In this document: positions 423 through 30,810 of the stretch, one piece after another
How the letters are laid out: each line of letters opens with the position of its first letter
Numbering within the stretch: the first letter of the stretch is position 1
DNA from: Octopus bimaculoides
Taxonomy: Eukaryota
Assembly: GCF_001194135.2 (NCBI RefSeq)
Contig: NC_068982.1
Location: 119,346,454-119,386,239 of the forward strand
DNA: 39,786 bases
Direction: 5' to 3'
Position numbers and translations under genes: made by a program
Notes under the pieces: generated by a model
Seen by the model: the letters and a program-made list of their open reading frames with translations, nothing else
Told to the model about the DNA's origin: nothing
The model's database searches: none

Positions 423-1486
423 TCATAAGGAGGAGGGGGCTGCGTTGAGTCCGAAGGGGAAAGAAGAATTAAGGTTAAAAATGTAGCGTTGCTCCAAGTG
501 GAGTCGCGAGGGAGTGGACCCATGGTGCAGGGCGAGGCCAAAAACGGAGATGTTAGAGGGAGAGTGGTTGGCCAAGTGGAAGTGACGGGCGACGGGGGAG
601 TCCGAACATAGCCGAACGTCCCTTAGGTGTTCGGTGAAACGGTCGGCCAGCCGGCGGCCCGTCTGCCCCACGTAGAGTTGGTCGCATAGGGTGCATTTGA
701 TGCAGNNNNNNNNNNNNNNNNNNNNNNNNNNNNNNNNNNNNNNNNNNNNNNNNNNNNNNNNNNNNNNNNNNNNNNNNNNNNNNNNNNNNNNNNNNNNNNN
801 NNNNNNNNNNNNNNNNNNNNNNNNNNNNNNNNNNNNNNNNNNNNNNNNNNNNNNNNNNNNNNNNNNNNNNNNNNNNNNNNNNNNNNNNNNNNNNNNNNNN
901 NNNNNNNNNNNNNNNNNNNNNNNNNNNNNNNNNNNNNNNNNNNNNNNNNNNNNNNNNNNNNNNNNNNNNNNNNNNNNNNNNNNNNNNNNNNNNNNNNNNN
1001 NNNNNNNNNNNNNNNNNNNNNNNNNNNNNNNNNNNNNNNNNNNNNNNNNNNNNNNNNNNNNNNNNNNNNNNNNNNNNNNNNNNNNNNNNNNNNNNNNNNN
1101 NNNNNNNNNNNNNNNNNNNNNNNNNNNNNNNNNNNNNNNNNNNNNNNNNNNNNNNNNNNNNNNNNNNNNNNNNNNNNNNNNNNNNNNNNNNNNNNNNNNN
1201 NNNNNNNNNNNNNNNNNNNNNNNNNNNNNGTGGGAGGGGTATCCTCGATGCATGAACAGACGAGCAAGATACTGGGACTGGGTCTCGAAATCCTGGTCCA
1301 GGCTGCACAAACGTCGGAGGCGGAGGAACTGGGAGTAGGGGATGGCCCGTTTGGTGTGGAATGGATGGGAGGAGGAGAAGTTGAAGTAGAGGTGGGAGTC
1401 AGTGGGTTTGAAGAAGGCGGAGGTAGTTAGAGAGTTGGAGCGGGGTTGATGGAAAGAGAGATGTCGAGGAAGTTAACAGAGGTGTC
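423..1486 (-). mobile_element. 5'-truncated Penelope-like element (Neptune-like): RT thumb plus GIY-YIG endonuclease, interrupted by an assembly gap
   Basis: Minus-strand translation: SDTSVNFLDISLS / frameshift / TTSAFFKPTDSHLYFNFSSSHPFHTKRAIPYSQFLRLRRLCS...RGYP (PLE RT C-terminus); after the gap CIKCTLCDQLYVGQTGRRLADRFTEH...EQRYIFNLNSSFPFGLN (GIY-YIG). Confidence 0.9.
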
Positions 1487-5045: not shown

Positions 5046-7038
5046 CTACTTCAATATTCGTAAAATCATGTTACATAAATTATCGAGGCATATTTAAAAT
5101 GATACTGCAATTTCGGATATTTTTCCTTCCATATTTTCATGCATTTATACTTTACACCTTTAAAACCGTTTTCATTAATAGCGAAAAGAAAGCAAAATAA
5201 ACTCTTCTATAAAATTGCATTCAGCCAAAAGTAAAAAATAAAAGCCATATATAAAAGCATTTAGCATTTTCAATTTCAGCATATGTGACATGTCAAGCAT
5301 TATATTTTTCAGTGAAACCGATGCAAATTCGGTTATTTCGTTTCTGCAATGACATTAACATAATGGGTAAGGCATTGTGAAGAACATTATGACAGAATAT
5401 CCCAATATTTAACAATAACCAGTCATGCATTAGGTCCTCGTCACTAATTATCAACAGCATTCAAAGTGACTTTACAGCTAAAGGGCGAATTTCAAAATGA
5501 TTGAAAAATCGTTTAGAAAAAAAAAATTATTTATGCCAATAGCAATGGAGAGAGAAAATGTTAAAACAAAATGGAAAAGCGTATACTAAACACCATAATA
5601 ACACTGAAATAAAAAAAAATATTAAAACGTTAAGAAACAGTTTCTTTCCTCACATTTGAATGCTTTCCGGTATCATTTATATGCTTTCTAAATATGACAA
5701 AGATATATAAATTCTGTATATGTTTTTACAAGTATATCTTTTTCATAATGTTTCAACCGATATATCACATATATGCTTACAATGAAAGAACTAATAAAAC
5801 CAAATTTGCTTTGTCATTAATGTTAATTTTTTCTTTCACTGAGATATAAAACCGGGTGATTCGTGCTGTCAAAAGTAGATACAGTTGCCCAGAAAAAAAA
5901 TAGTTATATTCAACTTAGATAATAATTATTTGAGATTACATTCTATCATTTATCATGAAGCTGATCTACCAATGTCGAAGTTATTTTTCTTACTAAGATA
6001 TTTATCACGTTTATCACACTGATGAATTAGAATTTTCATGGAAAAATCAATATTTCACTCATTAAGTAGTCATTAATTTCTTATTGTCATTTATTATGAA
6101 TCGATATTTCATTAATGATCAATACATTTTAATGTGTTGTAAAAGTGATTAAATTAGAATTTTATGGAGTACAAGTTTTTATCATAAAACATCAAGGCGT
6201 ATGAAATACGTATTTTTCATCTTTCCTTATCCCTGTGGACTATATCATGCCAGTGTAGTGCAAAGATCCAAAATAGAATATCTTAAGGATCTAAATAATT
6301 TCAGGCGTATTGTAAATTCCATATATGCAGAGTTGTTGGTCGATATGTATTTCTAGGAATCTGAAATATACGAACAATCGTTGCTGGTAACTAAGATAAG
6401 AAGCGAATATTTTGCTGTTCGTTTCTCCCTAGAGATCAAATTCACTGGATTTCTCCCAAGAATGTTTCGAATATTTTTCATTCCTGATTTAAGAATGACT
6501 GAAGTTTATTTCGGGGCCAAAGAGAAAATCACTTTGCTGTTATATGCTAATTCGTTACATTTGGCAACTGATATCCCTGTAAATCTTAGCTTTCCACAAC
6601 CAGTGTGACCAAGATTTGATTGCTGAAGCTTGTAGATTCAATTTCTTTAAGCTACAGTTTGACTCAAAACTTCCACCTATTTCGTGGGTTTCTTTTGCGC
6701 TATCCACTCTGGTTTAAGCTTTTGAAATGGGTCGTTCGTCTTGTATAACTCAATAGTTTCCTGCTACAATAAGATTGGAGCTGCTATTCGCTACTTGCTT
6801 CTTTTTACATCCTTCTGTAATGCATCTATAAAATGGGATTAAGATATCATACTCTGCATCGTGCGTTTTGCATATGCTGGTAAGTACATGTTTCTGAAAT
6901 TTCTACAGATAAGTGTTGTCCTATGAAATGTAACGTGAAGTTGTATCACTTTTCGACATTTAATATGAAATTCCTTGTCCATTTTAAAAAAAAGTATAAT
7001 TCCATTTGTTTCATACAATCTATTTCAATTTTCACCAG

Positions 7039-7105
7039 GTTGGCGAAACGAGAAATCTTGCATTCGAGCCAATAACGCACACAATTAAAAAGGTCACAGT
7101 AAAAG
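7039..7105 (+). CDS. Candidate internal coding exon A (67 nt, phase 0->1): VGETRNLAFEPITHTIKKVTVK
   Basis: Acceptor ttcaattttcaccAG, donor AAAG/GTAAGA; only one frame open; in phase with exon B. Confidence 0.45.
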
Positions 7106-7238
7106 GTAAGAAATGTATACAAATATACTTTTAATCTGTCTTAATACATCTACTTGATTGTTGGTTGTAAAAGGTAAGCAATATATACAAATATACTTTA
7201 TATCTGTTTTAATACACCTACTTCATTGTTGATTGTAA
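7099..7238 (+). repeat. Tandem duplication, 68-bp period, two copies
   Basis: gtaaaaggtaagaaatgtatacaaatatac...ttgttggtt repeated at 7167 as gtaaaaggtaagcaatatatacaaatatac...ttgttgatt. Confidence 0.95.
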
Positions 7239-7556
7239 CATATATAATCTACATGTATACGGTTATTTGTCATTCATCCGGTTAAATCTCTCTGGTCTTC
7301 GATATCTGTTTTCTCTTTTTGATTTCACATTAAATTAACACATGCATTTCCTCCGACAAAGTGAATAGAAACGATTTGTCTTAGAAGGCGATAGAGCAGC
7401 AAATAATCGAGTTATCCACAACCTTGAACTTTAAAATACAGTGGACTCTGCAGAATATACAAAAATTGAATGTTCTATTATTAATCAGGTGAGAGATAGT
7501 CCACTATCCGAGAACGGTTTTAGTCTGATGTGGTGTTACACGGTTTTTTCTTGCAG

Positions 7557-7591
7557 CATTCGATTGTTCAGGACATGTAAAATGGTGGAAT
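7557..7591 (+). CDS. Candidate exon B (35 nt, phase 1->0): AFDCSGHVKWWN
   Basis: Acceptor ttttttcttgcAG with an upstream ctgat branch-like motif; donor AAT/GTAAGT; joins A and C in frame. Confidence 0.45.
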
Positions 7592-7977
7592 GTAAGTAAA
7601 CAACATACCAAGCAATTAAATCGAACCAATGGATAAATGTTGCCAAGCAGACTTACTAAATACTTGGACATCCTAAAGAAGACACCTGTTGTGACGTTCA
7701 TTAATATGGCATAGATTATAAGATGTAAGTTTTAGAGACAAAACGACTACATTGATTCAAATGACGGTGATGCACAATCTTCTCGTAAATATGGACTCGT
7801 ATTGCAACTTGTGATCACGCATAATTAATTATATTTTAGAGAGTTCTGCTGATATATAAGACCATGAATTACTGACAATCTCATTAATTCTAATGACGAG
7901 CTGAAATTAAAATTGTTAATGCTCTACAAACTTTACTTTTCCGTCTGTACTTCGGTTCTATTCCAGCTTTACACATA

Positions 7978-8003
7978 TATGTGTGTGTGTGTGTGTGTGT
8001 GTT

Positions 8004-8034
<31 letters not shown>

Positions 8035-8169
8035 GTTTGTGTGTGTTCGTGTATAACTCATATTCATATATATTTGCTTACATATGCGTTTATATATACT
8101 TATATGTACGGCACACACACATACACACACACACACATACACACACACACACACATACACACACACATG

Positions 8170-8203
<34 letters not shown>

Positions 8204-8210
8204 CATACAG
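7978..8210. repeat. (GT)n followed by (AC)n microsatellites
   Basis: Directly visible; opposite-sense dinucleotide tracts about 60 bp apart. Confidence 0.95.
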
Positions 8211-9261
8211 TCATTCGCATGCATATACTCTAGCTCTCTGTCCTTTATCTTTTGGAAATGACGAAAATACCATATTTGAAACGTTTTTGATTAACAATAT
8301 GAGCTTTGACGATTCACATTTGAGTAAGCAAGATCAAAAGGTGGAGGAATGTTATAAGGTAAACTTTATGTGGTCGTTTCAACCACTAGAAATAACAGTT
8401 TAACCTAACTTCGCTCACATTCTTTACAGCATAATAATGGAAGAAACCACTAGACAATATACACTCTGAAATAAAATAAATTTTGTTCGATAATATCTGG
8501 AAAACTTTCTTCTCGTACGCTAGTTCTACTGGAACACAGTTTACTTGGGTCAAAAATCTACCATTAAGTGAGAATTTGCTTTAGATGGGCCTACTAAATG
8601 TAAGTGCTATATCTTACACAAGTCAATCCGTACCACAATGCAAGCAGAAGAATATATAGGAAAAGTTATTTCGTAGCGTATCTTCATGATACAATGTATT
8701 TTATCACTCTTTTATTCAAGTTATAAATGCGAATTTCCTTCGATCAAACAATTTAAAGGAGTTAGATAACTTCATAGTAATACGAATGTCAGTGCCACAT
8801 ATACTACTTCTCAAATAGTGTAGATTTAATATTGTAAATGCTACAGGAATTAAATCACAATTTTGGAGTTTGTTATATATCTACACGAATGCGTTACATA
8901 AGTAGAACATAATTGTCACGTAATTTGTCCCTATTTTATCTACCTATTACACACACACGCACATACACGCACACACACATACTACAGACGCGTGCAGAGA
9001 AGGGAGCCATACATTGGTGTACACATATGCATATAAGGATATATGTATTATATTTCTTTGGTTTATAATACATTAACATAGATATATAAGCGGGAAATTT
9101 GACTGATCACCGCCATATGTGAATGTTTTCAGCCTCAGAGGAAGAGAGAAATAGGGTTTGATAAGAAACTGAAGAGGGAGTAAAAACCTCCCTCGAGTGG
9201 AGAGATTCACTGAGGGAGGAATATTATCTTTACTTTTTTCATATTATAAATATATTTATTT

Positions 9262-9634
9262 CAGCCCGCCAAAAAGTACCTTGGATCGTAAGGCGACATA
9301 TCGTGCTTCAGGAGACCTTTTGAGTCAAGTGCATCAATATCAAAATAAAATGGAATTTGTAGCTGTGATTTCCATGCCTTGGCAGTTAAAAAGCAACATC
9401 CGAACATTGTCGATGCCAGCGCCGCCTCGACTGGTGTCCATGCTGGTGACACGTAAAAAGCACCCACTACACTCTCGTAGTGGTTAGCGTTAGGAAGGGC
9501 ATCCAGTTGTATAAACACTGCCAGAGTGGAGACTGATGAAGCCTCCTGGCTTCCCAGCCCCCAGTCGAGCCGTCCAACCCATGCCAGCAATGAAAACGGA
9601 CGTAAAATGATGATTATGATGATGATGATGATGA

Positions 9635-9637
<3 letters not shown>
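9262..9637 (+). mobile_element. Non-autonomous retroelement/SINE with RTE-like 3' tail ending in (GAT)n
   Basis: gtaaaaagcacccactacactctcg...ttaggaagggcatccag...ccaacccatgccagc..aaaacggacgtaaaatgatgat(gat)n; resembles from memory an abundant octopus repeat. Confidence 0.7.
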
Positions 9638-9669
<32 letters not shown>

Positions 9670-9730
9670 AATATATAAAAATAAAACGATAAAGAGAGCA
9701 AAGGTAAGGTTGAAGAATTTTATGGATAGA

Positions 9731-9779
9731 GTCTTACAGCTGTTTCTGGGAAGATCCAGTACTTCCCTTCATCGGAGAC
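9731..9779 (-). ncRNA. Minimal type I hammerhead ribozyme-like motif (PLE type), partly degenerate
   Basis: Minus strand: GUCU-CCGAUGA-A-GGGAAG(uacuggau)CUUCCC-A-GAAAC-AGCU-GUA-AGAC. Stem I GUCU/AGAC, 6-bp stem II, palindromic stem III. Confidence 0.7.
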
Positions 9780-9867
9780 AGAAAAAATAAAGTAATCTAT
9801 TATTATATCCATAGGCGGATATTTTTAGTATGAAGTGGTAACGAGTGTGATGTGCTGAAAAAAGAGA

Positions 9868-9927
9868 GAGAACAATACTTGAAGTGTAGTTTCATTCCAA
9901 TGAAACTACACTTCAAGTACTGTTCTC
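9868..9927. repeat. Near-perfect 29-bp inverted repeat with 2-nt loop, abutting a gap
   Basis: gagaacaatacttgaagtgtagtttcatt-cc-aatgaaactacacttcaagtactgttctc (28/29 paired). Confidence 0.95.
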
Positions 9928-10819
9928 NNNNNNNNNNNNNNNNNNNNNNNNNNNNNNNNNNNNNNNNNNNNNNNNNNNNNNNNNNNNNNNNNNNNNNNNN
10001 NNNNNNNNNNNNNNNNNNNNNNNNNNNNNNNNNNNNNNNNNNNNNNNNNNNNNNNNNNNNNNNNNNNNNNNNNNNNNNNNNNNNNNNNNNNNNNNNNNNN
10101 NNNNNNNNNNNNNNNNNNNNNNNNNNNNNNNNNNNNNNNNNNNNNNNNNNNNNNNNNNNNNNNNNNNNNNNNNNNNNNNNNNNNNNNNNNNNNNNNNNNN
10201 NNNNNNNNNNNNNNNNNNNNNNNNNNNNNNNNNNNNNNNNNNNNNNNNNNNNNNNNNNNNNNNNNNNNNNNNNNNNNNNNNNNNNNNNNNNNNNNNNNNN
10301 NNNNNNNNNNNNNNNNNATATATATATATATATACTGATACGTGCCTTCAAATTCTCGACCACGCTTGAGAGGAATGGCCAGCCATCAAACGATATCGCA
10401 CACTTTTTGGTCGCCTTCATTCCAAAGCCATTAAGACATACCTCTTAATTCTTTGCATACTATTTTTTGGCTTTATTATCAAACTATGCCTTGCTTGTTG
10501 AACGCTGATTACACACCACAGTTATGCTACATCATTTTTGTATTTGAGAACCGACTCCCGCCAACATACCAATACTACCAACATCATCTAGCTACACATT
10601 ATGAGCGAAATGTATAGTTTATAATTTAGAAACCAATTACGTAACCTGATGGGGTTTCTTCTGCATTATGTGATGCATTCGATTTCATTATATCGTCCCC
10701 ACTCACTAGGGAGCAATGCAGAATACGCCGAAACGATCGTTGTGATAAATAAGTTTTCCAGTACACTCCTCTGTCTTCCGTATCAATCATTTGGTCTAAG
10801 TGTGTATGTATGTATGTAT

Positions 10820-11097
10820 GTATTTTTATATAAGCTTAAAGCTTATGGTGATTACCGTGCAATGACCAAGAAAAATAGTCTAATAAAGGGGCATATAAGC
10901 CCTCGACAGAAAAAAGGTTTTCCTATCCGCGTGATAAAACACTTTTAGTCGTGTTAAAAATGGGATGTGGTTTCGTGTCCCACGCGGATAGGAATACCTT
11001 CTTCTTTATGTCTATGGCTTATATGCCCCCATATTAGACTATTTTTCTTAGTTATTGCACAGTGATCGCCATGAGATTTATGCTTATATAAAGATAC
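10820..11097. mobile_element. MITE-like fold-back element (about 115-bp inverted arms, 47-bp spacer)
   Basis: 10820-10933 matches the reverse complement of 10981-11097 (e.g. aagaaaaatagtctaata, ggggcatataagcc, ttcctatccgcgtg). Confidence 0.8.
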
Positions 11098-11139
11098 CAA
11101 TATTATTATTTACAAGATTATAAAACACCCGAAAATATA

Positions 11140-11149
11140 TATGTATGTA

Positions 11150-11235
<86 letters not shown>

Positions 11236-11320
11236 TGTGTGTGGTGTGAGTATGTGTGCATGTGTGGTGTGTGTATGTGTATTTGTGTATGTGTGTTACG
11301 AGTGTGCACGAGTGTGAGTC
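11140..11320. repeat. (GT)n microsatellite
   Basis: Directly visible. Confidence 0.97.
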
Positions 11321-12428
11321 AGTGATCTGATGATGATTGGATCACGGGCTTTTTGAATTAAGCATTGTCTGATAACAGATTTTCTAACCGTGACTCTACA
11401 CCTTGTTTTCGTGTTCACATAATCGATGAGTACCATTTTAAAGACGTCGTTGTTTTTTATATTTGCAGAGTGCAATTTTAGAGGTTCGTGGATGCGTTTT
11501 CTAGGAAGCTGAGCTATCAGTGAGGTTATTGCATATTAGATTCTCTGATACACTTAATGTATGTATCGGGATTTCGCTCCCGTTTGGGCGCAATGCTATG
11601 AGTTACTGCAGAAACTAACTTCAAATTCTATCAAATTTCACGCTGAAAAAAATACTCTAAATAATATAAGCATAGTTACGTTATGTTTGAAAAACAAAAT
11701 AAGCGGGTCACAAGAGCAACGCATTTGCTTATTAATTAAAAACACGGTTACAATTTAAAAGCGCATAATTAAAATTAAGTAACAAACAAATCGGCATATA
11801 TAAAGATGTATATTTAATGATAGAAAGATAAACTTATTTGGAAAGGATCACTCTTGTATTCAGATAATTCACTTCTAGATATATTGAGTTTCATCTTATG
11901 CATTCAGATCTTTCACATTTTAACGGCACTTGCAGACCTAACTCGGCCATCAATGCCCTGCAGCAGTACACATTTGTTTCCAATTAGTCGCAAATATTGT
12001 GCATGTCTGATTGCCTCTAAATATCGATCCATTACTGTTAATCATACTAAATGGATTTTGTTATGAGAGAGAATTGAGAACTTTCCTTCCGGTAATATAT
12101 CGCAATTACTGTGGAAATTTCCATATCATAAGGTGAGGTCAATAACAGATAATAGGATAAGGTGATTAAATATTCATATATATTTTTTAATTTGTTACTG
12201 GAATTTGATAGCTTAACTTATGTTGCTTCTGACGCTTAGCGATATCTCTATTTCAGCAAGGGATTTATCCTCCCGTTTTCACTTCTCATGTTACTTTAGA
12301 TATTTATTTACTCAGCAATTAAAGCGTATAATCTATTGTGACGAACGTCTTTACTTAATGAAACGTTACTTACTATCGTTTACAATGAGCACTTGTCATG
12401 AATGATAGTATTAATACATCGTTTTCAG

Positions 12429-12483
12429 ACACCGCATTACGGGAGGACATTATTTAGTATGATATGGAGCACAGAATTTCATT
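12429..12483 (+). CDS. Candidate exon C (55 nt, phase 0->1): TPHYGRTLFSMIWSTEFH
   Basis: Acceptor tattaatacatcgttttcAG, donor ATT/GTAAGT; only one frame open; in phase with B. Confidence 0.45.
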
Positions 12484-13001
12484 GTAAGTAACTGACTGTG
12501 TAGCGTTGAATTATTCCTAAAATGTGTTACAAAAGTTCATAAATTGCCGTTGCCTTTTAATCGAAACCAACTCACTGAATGTGTTTGCTATCACCTTATA
12601 TTTTACTCTACGATTCGTTGAAAACTTGCCTTAGAGTTATGAATTTTATTGTGCATTGTCTTCAGACGCAAATATGTTTTCATACTGTACTCCTTCGCCT
12701 AAATCGTAAAGGTTTATAGTAAACCAAGTGAAGTAGGATATAAAAACGAAGAATAGTATTTAGTTACGACTTTTATGTTCTGTGTTCAAAATCTCGTCAA
12801 GAGAGATTTTGCAACTTAACAATATACACGAAATACGTAAGAGGCATGTAGTGAAGCTAATTTAAAACAGTTGGATTTGCTCCTAAATGGGCCTAATTTA
12901 GAAATTCTATGAGTTCTGATGAAACAATAATAAATTTACATTTGGTCGTCTAGACAATACATATCAATATATATGTATCAATATATCAATAACTACGGTT
13001 A

Positions 13002-13898
13002 GAGACTGTGATCAACAGAGTGCAGTTCCTCCACTCCTATTACATTAAACCCACAGCTTCGAAATACGTTGTTCACAAGGACTCAGCTTTGTTACACAAC
13101 ATGAAAATGAACATACTGATAGCAGACTTAGGATAATGAACAACGTGTCCCCACTATGCAAACCCCATGAAACGAAGTAACATGTACAGAACTTCATGCA
13201 CTGAATGCAATTCTCTGGATATGAACAGAAAAATAGGGTTTGAGTATACAGGGGTGCTAGAAAGTTTGATAACATTACATGTCATGATACCAGTGGTACC
13301 TGCCCTAGATATAGAAGCAAAGACTGGTATAGGATATAAAGTGCTTGTGACAAAGCAGAGTGAACAAGTGGTATAAAACCGATAAATATCAAGAAGTGAT
13401 TTTGGAGAAGCCACAGCCCATGGTGAATTAACTTGTAGATTTAGGAAAGCTCTGAAGGAGAACAAACTCAACATTAAGATTGTTGAAAAGCCAGGGAACT
13501 CCATCAGATCACAACTATGTAGGACGCACCCCCTTTTTAGAATACCATATGTACCAATGATAACTGCATGTATGTAGGATTAGCTTTGGCATTAAGAGTA
13601 GAACTAGAAATGTAGTATACAGCATAAAATGCATACAAGGTGCCTGTAGACATGAACATGACATAGGGGAGAAATCTAGGAGCATTGCGGAAAGACTAAA
13701 TGAACAGTTCAGACAATATGACCACAAAAACAGTCCTCCATATTCTATCAATATGCTAAGGAGCAACATAGAGGCAATCTGTTTCAACTTGACATCTGCA
13801 TTTTATCTAAACATCCATAGGGCCCAACACTCAGATAAATACAGGAGTACGTCCTCATAAATGAAACTTCCCCAGTACTGGATACGAAATACACGTAG
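13002..13898 (+). mobile_element. Decayed 5'-truncated Penelope-like element (RT thumb plus GIY-YIG), different subfamily from the other two
   Basis: Across frameshifts: YYIKPTASKYVVHKDSAL..MKMNILI; HVQNFMH*MQFSGYEQK; GELTCRFRKALKENKLNIKIVEKPGNSIRSQL; RTRNVVYSIKC...DIGEKSRSIAERLNE; IQEYVLINETSPVLDTK. Confidence 0.85.
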
Positions 13899-13974
13899 TA
13901 GATAATCATACCCCGGTACTCGCAGTTTATATTTATATACTGGTAGAATAGTTAGTGGGCTATCATAGAGACAG

Positions 13975-24505: not shown

Positions 24506-25984
24506 TTAGAATGAGTACTAAGAAAACTCGCTTAGGATGAAATGAAAATGTGAATTAGCGCAAATAGAATAACACATAAAGTTTTTTTTTTAATATTTTG
24601 ATATCCAAAGTCCTACAGTGGATGCATAAATATAGTAAGTCACTGTTTATTGAAAGAGGTACAATATATTTTTATCTACCACCCATTTGACTACTCTTAA
24701 ATAGAATATTTTCTGAATTATGTAAGTGTTTCAATATAGTCATATTGGACATAGTTACATTGTTTATGAGGCATTTGAATATGTTCAAGACATGTTATTA
24801 AACATAGAGTGGTGTCACCCCTCAGCTTTCGCTCTTAAAGGAACTCATAATTTCTTTTCGTTCTTTCTCTGTATAATCTCTTTTCTTTCTTTCCTTTGTT
24901 CTATTCACAGGAACACTGACAAATGTAAAGATATAGGTAGAAGATCAAAGCAAGAAACTTTTGAATATGCATGTAAGCATAGCGGAAGTTTTTTGTTAAA
25001 AAGATGTATAAGAGTTTGACAATAGTCGTTGGTTGTGTGTAGAGTGGTACCAAGAAATGTAACGGTTTCTATTTTTAAGAGACATGAAATGTGGATTTTA
25101 TATATTGCTTTTGTCTCTTCGAATTGTATCCTCCTTAGGTCCTGTGTCATTGTGTTAGCCTCATTCAAACAGAGAAATTGCATTAAGTGTACATGTCTTC
25201 GCGGAAGTAGTATTTACTGATATATGAATATCAGAAGTAGAAATTTAACTGACGCCAATATCCAAATGTTCATAATCCGATAGGACAATAGGTGTATGCG
25301 CATGCCTACCTGTCTGCATGCACGCATGTATGTATGTATGTATGTAAGGAGAAGGAGAACTCTGACAAACAACCTCAGTTGCATTGCGGCTACATGGAGA
25401 AATAGGGGAAAACATTGGGAGTTAAGTCAAAAAAAGATATCCGGAGCCGGAGTTCATAAGAATTTCAATGAAGAGGAGTTTACTAAACAACTGGTGCAAA
25501 GGGATAAACCACAAGTCAAAACGGTCTTCGTGCCAGTGGACTCAGATTCCCGAGGCTGAAGGAGTGGATTTGCCATTGTCACATAGCGTCCTCACTATAT
25601 TTTCACACAAAGAATTTTATGTTGTACACTCTCGTTTCTTTTCGTTCCAGTCCCACAGTGACGAGAGATTACGGGTGAGATTACAGCGAAATTACAGGTG
25701 AAGGTAACTAGATAGTTGCATGAAGGTGTATGAAGCTGGTCCTTCATACACCTGTATGAAAGTGGCCCTTGAACAAATAGTAAGTCTTCTCTAAACCCAT
25801 GCCAGAGAAAGAGTCTGGCAGCATTGAGGGCAAACGGGTAGTCCTTTCTAGAACAGTACTACTTAGCTTGAAATAAGGTAGAGGGCAGAAAAAAATGACT
25901 GCGCTCATGTTGCTCATACAAGCAAGGGCATCTAGTACATCATTTTTATGTTTGTAGCAACACTTTTGGCATAACTGTCAGCAT

Positions 25985-26975
25985 AAAAAAACACTGAACT
26001 CTTCTATCAGTTACGTCCCGGTAACAATCTAGAAATCTTGCCCAGCGTGATTGTTGAAGGAAAAGCTTTGAAAACATTTGATGCTTTCATGCATTTTTCT
26101 TCCACAATAACTCGACAGGGAGTTCTAAACTAGAACTAGTTACGCCGGTACAGTTTTTAGAAGTTCTATGATCGACTTTGAAATGCACGTGATATCTCAA
26201 TACGAACAAAAACAGATATGTATAAGTTAGTTGCTCTAGCAACTCTTTTATATGGAGCAGAGACCTGGACACTTTGTAAGCATATCAGGCAACTGAACAG
26301 CTTTTGTTGCATAAAGTTATGTGGGGTGATGCAGTAAAGAACAGCACTATTCTGGAAATATGTGGAATACCCAGTATAGAAGCTTTCTTATTCGAGCCTC
26401 AAATGCGATGCTCTGGACATATCCTACGCATGAATAATAGTCGAATACGAAAAAGAAATATCTTATGATCAGCTTGTAAATTTAAAATGTTATGCAGGCC
26501 GGTCATTTCTACGGTATACGGACAATACCAAATATGACTTGAATCGCCTGAATATTAGGAAATGAAACTGAGAATCTTGCGAGAAACAGTGCAGAAGGGA
26601 GGAGACAGTACTTTTTTCAGTTTCAAAATTTCGAATCTCAAAAGTATTTCATCAAGACTAGTTACCCGAAAATAGAAACATATATTAACAGATCAACATT
26701 GTTCCTGTGAACGACCATTGATCACATAGTGATTTCTCAGTTAGATTATGCGCCAGTTTAGTAAGTCATGCCCATATCCATATTCTTTTCGGTGTCCTGA
26801 GAACTCGCATGGAGTCACCAGGTGAAATGATTGAATTGTAAACATTGGTGAATAGTAGTAATAGCAAAATATGGGCCTTTTGTTGATTGTTTATTTGGTT
26901 GGAATTTTTTCTTTTCTCTTCTCGGCGAAAACTCATACGTCATCTTCGACGGGAGTGTCCATCATCTATATAGAT
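25985..26975 (+). mobile_element. Decayed RTE-clade LINE, RT C-terminus, zinc-finger remnant and 3' end
   Basis: TELFYQLRPG..PSVIVEGKAL; RDISIRTKTDMYKLVALATLLYGAETWTL; WGDAVKNSTILEICGIPSIEA; QMRCSGHILRMNNSR; RLCASLVSHAHIH; terminal gtcatcttcgacggg. Confidence 0.85.
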
Positions 26976-27322
26976 AGATAGTGAGAGAAAGATGGAGGGA
27001 CATAGTGAAGAGAAAGAGTACTGCCGACTAAGTTTGTGTTTTCAGGAGAAGAGGGAATGAAATGTCGGTCTACTCTGATAGAGACAAGTTGATTTTAGGG
27101 AACTGTGTACGGAAGGTAATTTGTGATTAAATATATAAAATGGTGCAATGGTGATGTGGTAGTTTAATGACGACGTTGATTCGACATTGGAGACAGTATA
27201 ATGCTTGTGCTTGAAATTCATATGCTTGGCAGTAATGTATTTTGAAAGTTTCTTAATATCAAAGTGGTTCCTGTTTATGTTTAATTTCACGAGACAGTCA
27301 ACAAGTCCCCAATTCTCAACAG

Positions 27323-28821: not shown

Positions 28822-30810
28822 TCATTGTTTGTTAAGCTTGGGTTTGAATTCTTTAATAAAGTCCTTTTCTCTCAGCAGCTTTCTTTCAATTTCATTCAGG
28901 TCGTAAAGTTTATGAAATGAAAATATAAAAGTTTTCCGACCACATGTTGTTAGATGGTTACTCAGTGATATTTGGCGGACTTCTGGATTTTAATTTGTTG
29001 TCGATGCACACGTGAACGTTCTGATAGTGCATTACAGTCTGGCCAACGAAAAGTTCTTCACAATTTGGGCATTTGATGCAGTAGATTAAATTTCTGCTTT
29101 TGAAGTTCATGTTCGTGTTTGTGAATATTTTCCCTGTTTTTGTGTTCATATATGGGCCGGTATGAATTAATTGGCATGTACCGCATCGGCTATCAATGCA
29201 TTTAGACACAGTGAATGACTGATTTTTGTTGCTAACCTTGCCTTTGCTAATAACTTTTTCAAGCTTTTAGGTTGTCTCTTACTGAGAGTTATAGTTTTAT
29301 CTGTAATGATATTACTCAATTCCTTACTTTATGTAATGATTGGTTGGTTTGTTTTAGCGATATTGAAGATATTGAAGAAGCAGTGTCCTCAGTTGTTGTA
29401 TGGGTATATTCAAAGCCTGCTGAATACCATTTCTGTAAGTTGTGACGGGTAGTTTTGTTTGAGCAGAAATTCTTTCAGTTCCATCAGGCGCTGATTTCTG
29501 GTCTTTAGATCCTCTACTATGGTATAGATTCTTCTGGCTAAGCAGTATGGGATGTTACGTTTTGTATGCGGTGGATGGGACGATTTAAAATTCAGGTATT
29601 GATGTGTATCTGTGTGTGTATAATGTATATATGTGGTAATGGCGGTGTTCTTTTTAATTACCATTATATCTAGAAATGATAATTTGGTACTGCTCATCTT
29701 TGTAAATTGGATGGATGGGTGTAGGTTGTTTAGGACGATATTGAATTCTTCCACACTGCTTTGAGATTTTGTCCAGTTTATGATGCAATCGTCGAGGTAT
29801 CTCTTCCATGTTTTTTTCAATACACTTACTAAATTCAGTGCTGTAACTCTCCTCTGTTTCCTGGTAGAGATTTTGTTCTAAGTATCCTATCACCGAGTTC
29901 GCATAAACGGGAGCAAACCTCGTTCCCATAGCCGTGCCTTTAATTTGGATATAGTCTTTTCCATTGAAGAGGAAAGTGTTGCTTTCCAGAATAAGTCTGA
30001 CTGAGTCTAATATAAATGTTACTGTGAATCTGTTGGGAATTGCTTCTCTATGTTTATCTACCCAGTATTTGATCGCCTTTATTCCTAAATCATGTGAGAT
30101 ATTGGTGTAAAGGCTTACTACATCAAAACTTAGTAGAATTGAATTTGTTTCAGTGGTTTTGGGAAGATGGGATAGAAAATCGATGTCATCCCGAATGAAG
30201 CCGGGTATGTAGATACATAGTGGCTTCACAATAATGTCGATGAAATTGCTTAGACGGTTGGTCGGGCATGCTGGGCCAGCTATAATTGGTCTAAGTTTTA
30301 AATCTTTTGTATATAGCACTTTCATGTATTCACTTCCTTGTTCTTTTACTGCCTGTTGAATGTCTTCTGACTTATGTATTTTTGGTAAGCCATAAAAATT
30401 GCTGAGTTTTGGCTCGAAATTGGTGATGTAGCCTCTTTCATTGTCAGTAAGTGAGATGTAGCGTTTTGAAAGCAGGTGGCTGATCTTCTTCATGATGCAG
30501 TGGTCTATATTCGAGGGTATTTCACAATAGAAGGTTGTATCTTTCAGATGGTCCTCAACCAAATCCTTGTAGTATTTCACATCCATGATAACCATTGCTA
30601 CCGCTTTATCTGCTTGTTTAATTATTATTGTTTCATCGTTTTGTATGCGTTTAAGTGCAGATATCTCTGATCTGTTAATGTTCGCCCTAACTTTGGTATT
30701 TTGTTTTAGGGAAAAGTTTGATAGGGTATCAATATACTGGTCAAGGTAGATATGTCTGCCTTTTTGTGGGGGCGAAATTTGATTTATTCCTCACTAAGGA
30801 ATCTTCAGCT

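What the first reader, a model, noticed from the sequence alone, without database searches (positions are those of the whole stretch)
7039..12483. Hidden tiny-exon gene: three short exons splice into an iGluR/ANF-receptor amino-terminal-domain-like peptide
Seen: exons of 67, 35 and 55 nt, each with consensus AG and GTAAG sites, are phase-compatible (0->1->0->1) and give VGETRNLAFEPITHTIKKVTVK-AFDCSGHVKWWN-TPHYGRTLFSMIWSTEFH. Known: kainate-receptor ATDs read approximately [31 protein letters not shown], with the same V/MTVxxxxC..H..W..G....S.I pattern. Inference: the window is largely intronic to a LIVBP/ANF-type receptor gene (iGluR-like or related) with unusually small exons, invisible to the ORF track. 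Caveat: I also saw other strong-site exon candidates that do not fit (e.g. 27046-27115), so chance chains are possible, and I could not find the expected xTGxxxFxxxGxR exon.
Basis: partly seen in the sequence, partly recalled or inferred. Interest (0 to 1): 0.72.

Follow-up and report, generated by a model that had tools for sequence, protein, structure and literature searches.

The report
One real carbonic-anhydrase exon, two false
Of the three proposed tiny exons only the first (7039-7105) is real, and it belongs to an ordinary alpha-carbonic-anhydrase-type gene with very long introns, not to a glutamate-receptor-like gene; the other two exons and the spliced peptide are chance products.

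Summary
The three segments, their AG/GTAAG sites and the 52-aa translation are in the sequence as described. Such chains are expected by chance: the + strand has 26 by the same criteria, and 48% of composition-matched random sequences have at least one.

RNA data split the chain. Exon 1 (7039-7105, +) is real. RNA contigs from three runs and five raw reads cover exactly this interval and continue into other exons. It is single-copy, nearly invariant in related species against about 10% divergence in its flanks, and its words are held by RNA-type runs of four organisms.

Exon 2 has no RNA support and carries an in-frame stop (7580 A>T) in all three relatives' contigs. Exon 3 is covered only by one unspliced contig that reads through both claimed sites.

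The transcript frame, GIAALSLLVK|VGETRNLAFEPITHTIKKVTVK|GHESKLRNFY, hits alpha-carbonic anhydrase: Pfam PF00194 positions 130-171 (E=0.011) and CA XIV residues 141-174 (E=0.013).

Both neighbouring exons lie outside the readable window. The gap at 9928-10317 lies in an intron and could not be bridged. This is an ordinary finding.

The parts
7039..7105 (+). Genuine internal coding exon (67 nt, phase 0 in, phase 1 out) encoding VGETRNLAFEPITHTIKKVTVK plus the first base of a Gly codon. It is part of an alpha-carbonic-anhydrase-type domain.
   Evidence: RNA contigs of runs X2, X5 and X8 and 5 raw reads of X17 cover 7037/7041-7106 only, and every one runs on into non-adjacent sequence. There are 0, 0 and 1 substitutions in three other-species contigs against 16/169 in the flanks. 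At least 18 RNA-type runs of 4 organisms hold its words. Genomic word depth is single-copy. The frame matches PF00194 and CA XIV.
7026..7038 (+). Used 3' splice site: pyrimidine-rich tract ending in CAG.
   Evidence: RNA coverage starts at 7037/7039. The upstream exon happens to end in AG, so the alignment reaches 7037. Sequence.
7106..7111 (+). Used 5' splice site GTAAGA.
   Evidence: RNA coverage stops at 7105/7106. The downstream exon starts with G, so the alignment reaches 7106.
7094..7229 (+). Tandem duplication of 68 nt (copies 7094-7161 and 7162-7229, 92% identical). It copies the last bases of the exon, the donor and 56 nt of intron. This creates a second AAAAG|GTAAG at 7168-7177 that shows no use.
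   Evidence: TRF 7099-7238, period 68. Alignment. All three other-species contigs lack one copy, while this species' own 2,561-nt DNA contig matches with 0 differences. RNA depth is zero from 7110 onwards.
7557..7591 (+).
Evidence: Zero RNA reads or contigs. Its words are absent from every indexed RNA run, including four that hold exon 1. The real downstream partner of exon 1 has a different sequence.
12429..12483 (+).
   Evidence: The only RNA-run contig here (X2, 171 nt, depth 2.7) covers 12416-12586 collinearly, reading through both the claimed acceptor and the claimed donor. X17, X5 and X8 show nothing.
9928..10317 (.). Assembly gap inside the long intron downstream of the real exon. It is flanked on the left by an ultra-high-copy repeat (9700-9927) that ends in a hairpin (9868-9896/9899-9927), and on the right by (AT)n.
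   Evidence: No contig of 4 DNA runs bridges it. Left-flank word depth is about 10^5 against 13-50 for single-copy sequence. Right-hand contigs begin at 10322-10351. Hairpin; sequence.

Best explanation
The window lies inside a + strand protein-coding gene with very long introns, and it contains one real exon of that gene, 7039-7105. The exon is spliced at the canonical CAG| and |GTAAGA sites. Its upstream exon ends ...GGAATAGCTGCGCTTTCACTCCTGGTAAAG and its downstream exon begins GACATGAATCCAAACTACGTAACTTTTACCT.... Neither partner is in the readable window.

The only open frame across the three pieces reads GIAALSLLVK|VGETRNLAFEPITHTIKKVTVK|GHESKLRNFY. This aligns collinearly with the central segment of the eukaryotic alpha-carbonic-anhydrase fold, the 'GLAVLGIFLKVG...' strand and the loop after it (CA II residues 139-178, CA XIV residues 141-174). 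The exon therefore most likely encodes a non-catalytic surface segment of an alpha-CA domain. That domain could be a CO2-hydrating enzyme or a CA-like domain of a larger protein.

Shown: exon boundaries, splicing to other partners, conservation, and lack of use of exons 2 and 3. Inferred: alpha-CA family membership, from 42 residues. Not determinable here: enzymatic activity.
For: Exon reality:
- 5 X17 reads lie on 7028-7109 only, and all are partial.
- contigs from X2, X5 and X8 cover 7037/7041-7106 with identical loose ends on both sides.
- 1/201 substitutions in the exon against 16/169 in the flanks, Fisher p=5e-5.
- exact exon words occur in RNA-type runs of organisms A, B, D and E.
- the exon is single-copy in DNA.

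Frame: one search shows that only one of three frames is open across the 130-nt composite.

Family:
- the best Pfam hit is PF00194 Carb_anhydrase, positions 130-171 of 254, E=0.011.
- the only PDB hits at E<=10 are human and mouse CA XIV, residues 141-174 and 139-174, E=0.013 and 0.18.
- the peptide aligns collinearly to CA II residues 139-178.

Against the chain: and chance statistics.
Against: The CA assignment rests on 42 residues, of which only 22 are encoded in the window. The 15.8 bits are below Pfam's gathering score of 27, and the E-values are about 0.01, not vanishing.

No zinc-ligand histidine or other diagnostic CA residue falls within the available sequence.

No protein in the 5.8-billion collection shares words with the peptide, so no full-length protein could be recovered to confirm the domain.

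The itemised substitution lists of read laying omit positions near the ends of a laid stretch. Placing the unlisted differences in the flanks is therefore an inference taken together.
Confidence: 0.84

Rival explanations
1. One reading: 7039-7105, 7557-7591 and 12429-12483 are spliced together and encode part of an iGluR/ANF-receptor amino-terminal domain.
For: All three segments have AG and GTAAG sites and compatible phases. Exon 1 is a real exon.
Against: Exon 1's RNA continues into a different downstream sequence. There is no RNA on exon 2, and only unspliced read-through on exon 3. All three relatives' contigs have an in-frame TAA in exon 2, which diverges at the intronic rate. The peptide has no Pfam hit at E<=10, a best PDB hit of NqrC at E=1, and no alignment to the quoted kainate-receptor segment at E<=100. 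Chains of this kind are expected by chance.
Confidence: 0.01
2. Exon 7039-7105 is real and conserved but belongs to a gene that is not a carbonic anhydrase, the CA match being a chance resemblance. Alternatively it is an exon of a non-coding or untranslated part of a transcript.
For: The CA hits are sub-threshold: 15.8 bits against a gathering score of 27, and E=0.013. DUF5939 also appears at E=0.044. No homologous protein was recovered.
Against: Two libraries independently rank CA first, at the same homologous positions and collinearly over the whole 42 residues, spanning both splice junctions. Exactly one frame is open. The exon is far more conserved than its flanks, which fits a coding constraint.
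Confidence: 0.12
3. Exons 2 and/or 3 are rare, tissue-specific alternative exons of the same gene that the sampled RNA runs missed.
For: Only about 6% of each raw RNA run was read. Contigs drop rare variants. Tissue identities are coded and unknown.
Against: Joining exon 1 to exon 2 gives a frame that ends in a stop in every relative examined. Exon 2 diverges at the neutral rate. The X2 contig reads through both exon 3 sites. None of about 15 indexed RNA runs of the species holds exon 2 words.
Confidence: 0.03

Closest known systems
Eukaryotic alpha-carbonic anhydrases (Pfam PF00194); closest solved relatives by sequence are human and mouse CA XIV (PDB 4lu3, 1rj5)
   Same: The transcript-derived peptide aligns collinearly with the central G-[LI]-A-x-L-x-[IL]-[FL]-[LV]-K-V-G strand and the following loop up to the K-G...N-F segment. 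From memory, not tested here: the exon starts at the same residue (the V of 'VG') as the 63-bp exon 5 of vertebrate CA1/2/3 genes, and ends within about one codon of the end of that exon.
   Different: Only 42 residues are known, with about 24% identity to CA II and about 44% to CA XIV over 34 residues. The score is below the family's curated threshold. The catalytic zinc ligands lie in unseen exons. The introns are far longer than in vertebrate cytosolic CA genes: at least 7 kb upstream and at least 32 kb downstream, unless a partner exon lies in an assembly gap.
CA-like domains of larger proteins (CA-related proteins; receptor tyrosine phosphatases of the PTPRG/PTPRZ type)
   Same: These have the same fold family, and their genes have very long introns (from general knowledge).
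   Different: Solved CA-like domains of such phosphatases did not appear among the PDB hits at E<=10, while CA XIV did. Nothing else in the window speaks for it. Not testable with 42 residues.
   Same: Nothing demonstrable. There is only a by-eye pattern, V/MTVxxxxC..H..W..G....S.I.
   Different: No profile hit. No pairwise alignment. The peptide is not made, because the junctions do not exist in RNA.

Membership tests
alpha-carbonic anhydrase (PF00194) | Match to the family profile at or above the curated gathering score | tested here: inconclusive
   PF00194 is the best hit at E=0.011, but 15.8 bits is below the gathering score of 27. Only 42 of about 254 domain positions are available, so the threshold cannot be reached in principle.
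alpha-carbonic anhydrase (PF00194) | Collinear alignment to the homologous segment of solved CA structures | tested here: met
   CA XIV residues 141-174 (E=0.013) and mouse CA XIV 139-174 (E=0.18) are the only PDB hits at E<=10. CA II residues 139-178.
alpha-carbonic anhydrase (PF00194) | Three zinc-binding histidines (His94, His96, His119 in CA II numbering) and the Thr199/Glu106 network | not testable with these tools
   These residues lie in exons outside the window. Only 30 nt of each neighbouring exon could be read.
alpha-carbonic anhydrase (PF00194) | Intron positions shared with other metazoan alpha-CA genes | not tested
   From memory, the exon corresponds to the 63-bp exon 5 of vertebrate CA genes.
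ANF_receptor / iGluR amino-terminal domain (PF01094) | Profile or pairwise sequence similarity of the spliced peptide | tested here: not met
   no Pfam family at E<=10; the best PDB hit is NqrC at E=1; no BLASTP alignment with the quoted kainate-receptor segment at E<=100.
ANF_receptor / iGluR amino-terminal domain (PF01094) | The peptide exists, that is, the junctions 7105>7557 and 7591>12429 occur in RNA | tested here: not met
   exon 1 joins another exon; no RNA on exon 2; unspliced read-through of exon 3.
ANF_receptor / iGluR amino-terminal domain (PF01094) | The reading frame is preserved in related species | tested here: not met

The most novel reading that the evidence does not exclude
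The exon belongs to an alpha-CA-domain gene that has no protein model in public collections. No protein among 5.8 billion shares words with it. It is conserved and expressed in at least four related species, and it has introns of tens of kilobases. It might be a CA-like domain of a larger, undescribed protein rather than a plain enzyme. In this species a lineage-specific 68-nt duplication has also created a spare 5' splice site that could in principle allow alternative splicing.
Probability: 0.25. Interest if true: 0.2.

Novelty: already known. Interest (0 to 1): 0.1.

Why it matters
It matters mainly as a calibration case. Consensus splice sites plus phase compatibility do not show that short exons are real in an AT-rich genome with long introns. 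One of the three candidates was genuine, the chain was not, and the family assigned by eye was wrong. In practical terms, 7039-7105 can be annotated as an exon of an alpha-carbonic-anhydrase-type gene, and 7557-7591 and 12429-12483 should not be annotated. Nothing here bears on an open biological question.

Tried and rejected
I worked with sub-stretches instead.
- Rfam at gathering thresholds and tRNA scans of the window found nothing.
- The two neighbour-exon sequences were searched for in the window as 30-mers with up to 2 mismatches and as all 12-mers with up to 1 mismatch, on both strands. They are absent.
- The search for homologous proteins with the 42-mer found no candidate.
- While comparing from memory I briefly considered that 'LSLLVKVGE' resembles the end of the M4 helix of kainate receptors ('LSVFVAVGE'). 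I rejected this because the PDB search, whose library includes many iGluR structures, returned only CA XIV.
Its exon 1 part had already given no words, and the RNA data show the peptide is not made.
- A Pfam scan of ten larger ORFs of the window gave nothing at E<=0.01 except a sub-threshold Tmemb_18A hit, which is probably chance.
Full report
**Observation**

The three segments are exactly as described. 7039-7105 is 67 nt, 7557-7591 is 35 nt and 12429-12483 is 55 nt. Each is preceded by AG and followed by GTAAG. Joined in phases 0>1>0>1 they read VGETRNLAFEPITHTIKKVTVK-AFDCSGHVKWWN-TPHYGRTLFSMIWSTEFH.

The window has about 33% G+C, is rich in microsatellites, and has five assembly gaps.

**Chance**

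The + strand has 37 GTAAG sites and 124 AG..GTAAG segments of 30-200 nt with an open frame. I then required a YAG acceptor with a pyrimidine tract, a GTAAG donor and introns of 60-6000 nt. Under those criteria the + strand holds 26 open three-exon chains. First-order Markov sequences of the same composition give 2.2 chains on average, and 48% contain at least one. The chain as such carries no information.

**RNA test**

- Over 6700-7900, raw RNA reads of run X17 fall only on 7028-7109, and all five run on into unlike sequence. Nothing falls on 7557-7591.
- At higher resolution, RNA contigs from three further runs (X2, X5, X8) cover 7037/7041-7106 and continue identically. Upstream they read ...ATGGAATAGCTGCGCTTTCACTCCTGGTAA(AG). 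Downstream they read (G)ACATGAATCCAAACTACGTAACTTTTACCT.
- The two- and one-base overlaps arise because the neighbouring exons end in AG and begin with G. The canonical sites place the exon at 7039-7105.
- The first mates lie on the minus strand, as expected for a + strand RNA in a standard stranded library.
- Neither partner is present anywhere in the readable window. The flanking introns therefore extend beyond the window, at least 7 kb upstream and at least 32 kb downstream, or a partner lies in a gap.

**Exon 3**

The only RNA-run contig over exon 3 (X2, 171 nt, depth 2.7) spans 12416-12586 collinearly. It starts 13 nt before the claimed acceptor and ends 103 nt past the claimed donor. That is unspliced RNA or DNA carry-over. 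X17, X5 and X8 show nothing.

**Matched index test**

The words of 7039-7105 are all held by at least 18 RNA-type runs from four organisms, A, B, D and E. The words of 7541-7607 are held by no RNA run, including X7, X21, X22 and X43, which do hold exon 1. Only two runs of unknown kind hold them, and those runs also hold 30-49% of all words of 6500-9900.

**Conservation**

- Orthologous DNA contigs of organisms B (X37, X39) and C (X38) align over 6700-7900 at about 90-93%.
- Within a 131-nt stretch centred on exon 1 they carry 7, 3 and 7 differences. Only one of these is itemised in the exon: 7046 A>G in X39, Glu>Gly.
- That gives 1/201 in the exon against 16/169 in the flanks, Fisher p=5e-5.
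- Caveat: the tool itemises only differences away from the ends of a laid stretch, so placing the others in the flanks is an inference. It is supported by the wider lay, where X37 shows none between 7033 and 7258, and by the exact 31-mers seen in other species.
- The same test on exon 2 shows 3 substitutions in 35 nt in X37 and in X38.
- The genomic word depth of this species over exon 1 equals that of its flanks, so the exon is single-copy.

**Identity of the real gene**

Only one frame is open across upstream end, exon and downstream start. It reads GIAALSLLVK|VGETRNLAFEPITHTIKKVTVK|GHESKLRNFY.

- Its best Pfam hit is PF00194, eukaryotic-type carbonic anhydrase, positions 130-171 of 254. The E-value is 0.011 and the score 15.8 bits, below the 27-bit gathering score, as is unavoidable for 42 residues.
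- Its only PDB hits at E<=10 are human and mouse CA XIV, residues 141-174 and 139-174, at E=0.013 and 0.18.
- From memory, the exon corresponds to the 63-bp exon 5 of vertebrate CA genes. I could not test this.
- No protein in the 5.8-billion collection shares words with the peptide, so no full-length model could be fetched.
- No other CA-like segment is detectable in the window.

It gives no BLASTP alignment with the quoted kainate-receptor segment at E<=100.

**The assembly gap (9928-10317)**

- None of four genomic runs bridges it.
- Its left flank (9700-9927) is an interspersed repeat of enormous copy number, with word depth of about 10^5 against 13-50 for single-copy sequence.
- That repeat ends in a 29-nt-arm hairpin that abuts the gap.
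- Its right flank is (AT)n.
- I cannot exclude that the gap hides an exon. The flanks suggest repeat sequence.

**The duplicated donor**

A 68-nt tandem duplication (7094-7161 and 7162-7229, 92% identical) copies the exon's last bases and its donor. All three other-species contigs have one copy. This species' own 2,561-nt DNA contig matches the window with 0 differences. The duplication is therefore real and lineage-specific. No RNA uses the second donor.

**Verdict**

One real, conserved exon of an alpha-carbonic-anhydrase-type gene is embedded in long introns. At least 10 alpha-CA genes have been reported in Octopus bimaculoides (PMC6639325). The finding is ordinary.

Noticed in passing
window 28958-30595 (- strand) and 426-704 (- strand): Retroelement remnants. 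A 313-aa ORF (29654-30595) has a weak RVT_1 hit (E=0.01). A 93-aa fragment next to gap 706-1229, and by eye the 83-aa ORF at 28958-29209, carry a CxxC...YVGQT motif; only the 93-aa fragment gave a weak GIY-YIG hit (E=0.043), the 83-aa ORF gave none. This combination is typical of Penelope-like elements. All hits are below the curated thresholds.
   Followed up: partly
window 9700-9927: An ultra-high-copy interspersed repeat, with genomic word depth of 10^5 against 13-50 for single-copy sequence. It ends in a near-perfect hairpin (9868-9896/9899-9927) that abuts the assembly gap. This is the probable cause of the gap.
   Followed up: partly
window 13069-13970: Many short RNA-run contigs at 95-99% identity, with depth up to 366 in X2. 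This is a dispersed repeat family transcribed from many loci, not an exon of the local gene.
   Followed up: no
window 7094-7229: A 68-nt tandem duplication of the exon's donor region. It is specific to this species and absent from three contigs of two related organisms. It creates a second, apparently unused 5' splice site.
   Followed up: yes
window 26240-26275 (+ strand): This candidate 'exon' translates to STLLYGAETWTL. From memory, that resembles the conserved LLYG.E.W motif of LINE reverse transcriptases, so it is probably a decayed LINE fragment rather than a host exon.
   Followed up: no
   Followed up: no
window 24726-25019 (+ strand): A 97-aa ORF with a sub-threshold Pfam hit to Tmemb_18A (E=0.0082, 17 bits against a cut-off of 29.9). 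It is probably chance.
   Followed up: no
runs X12, X15 (kind '?'): These runs hold 30-49% of all words of 6500-9900, including intronic 'exon 2' words. They therefore behave like genomic or nascent-RNA libraries, and their holding a segment should not be read as evidence that it is an exon.
   Followed up: no
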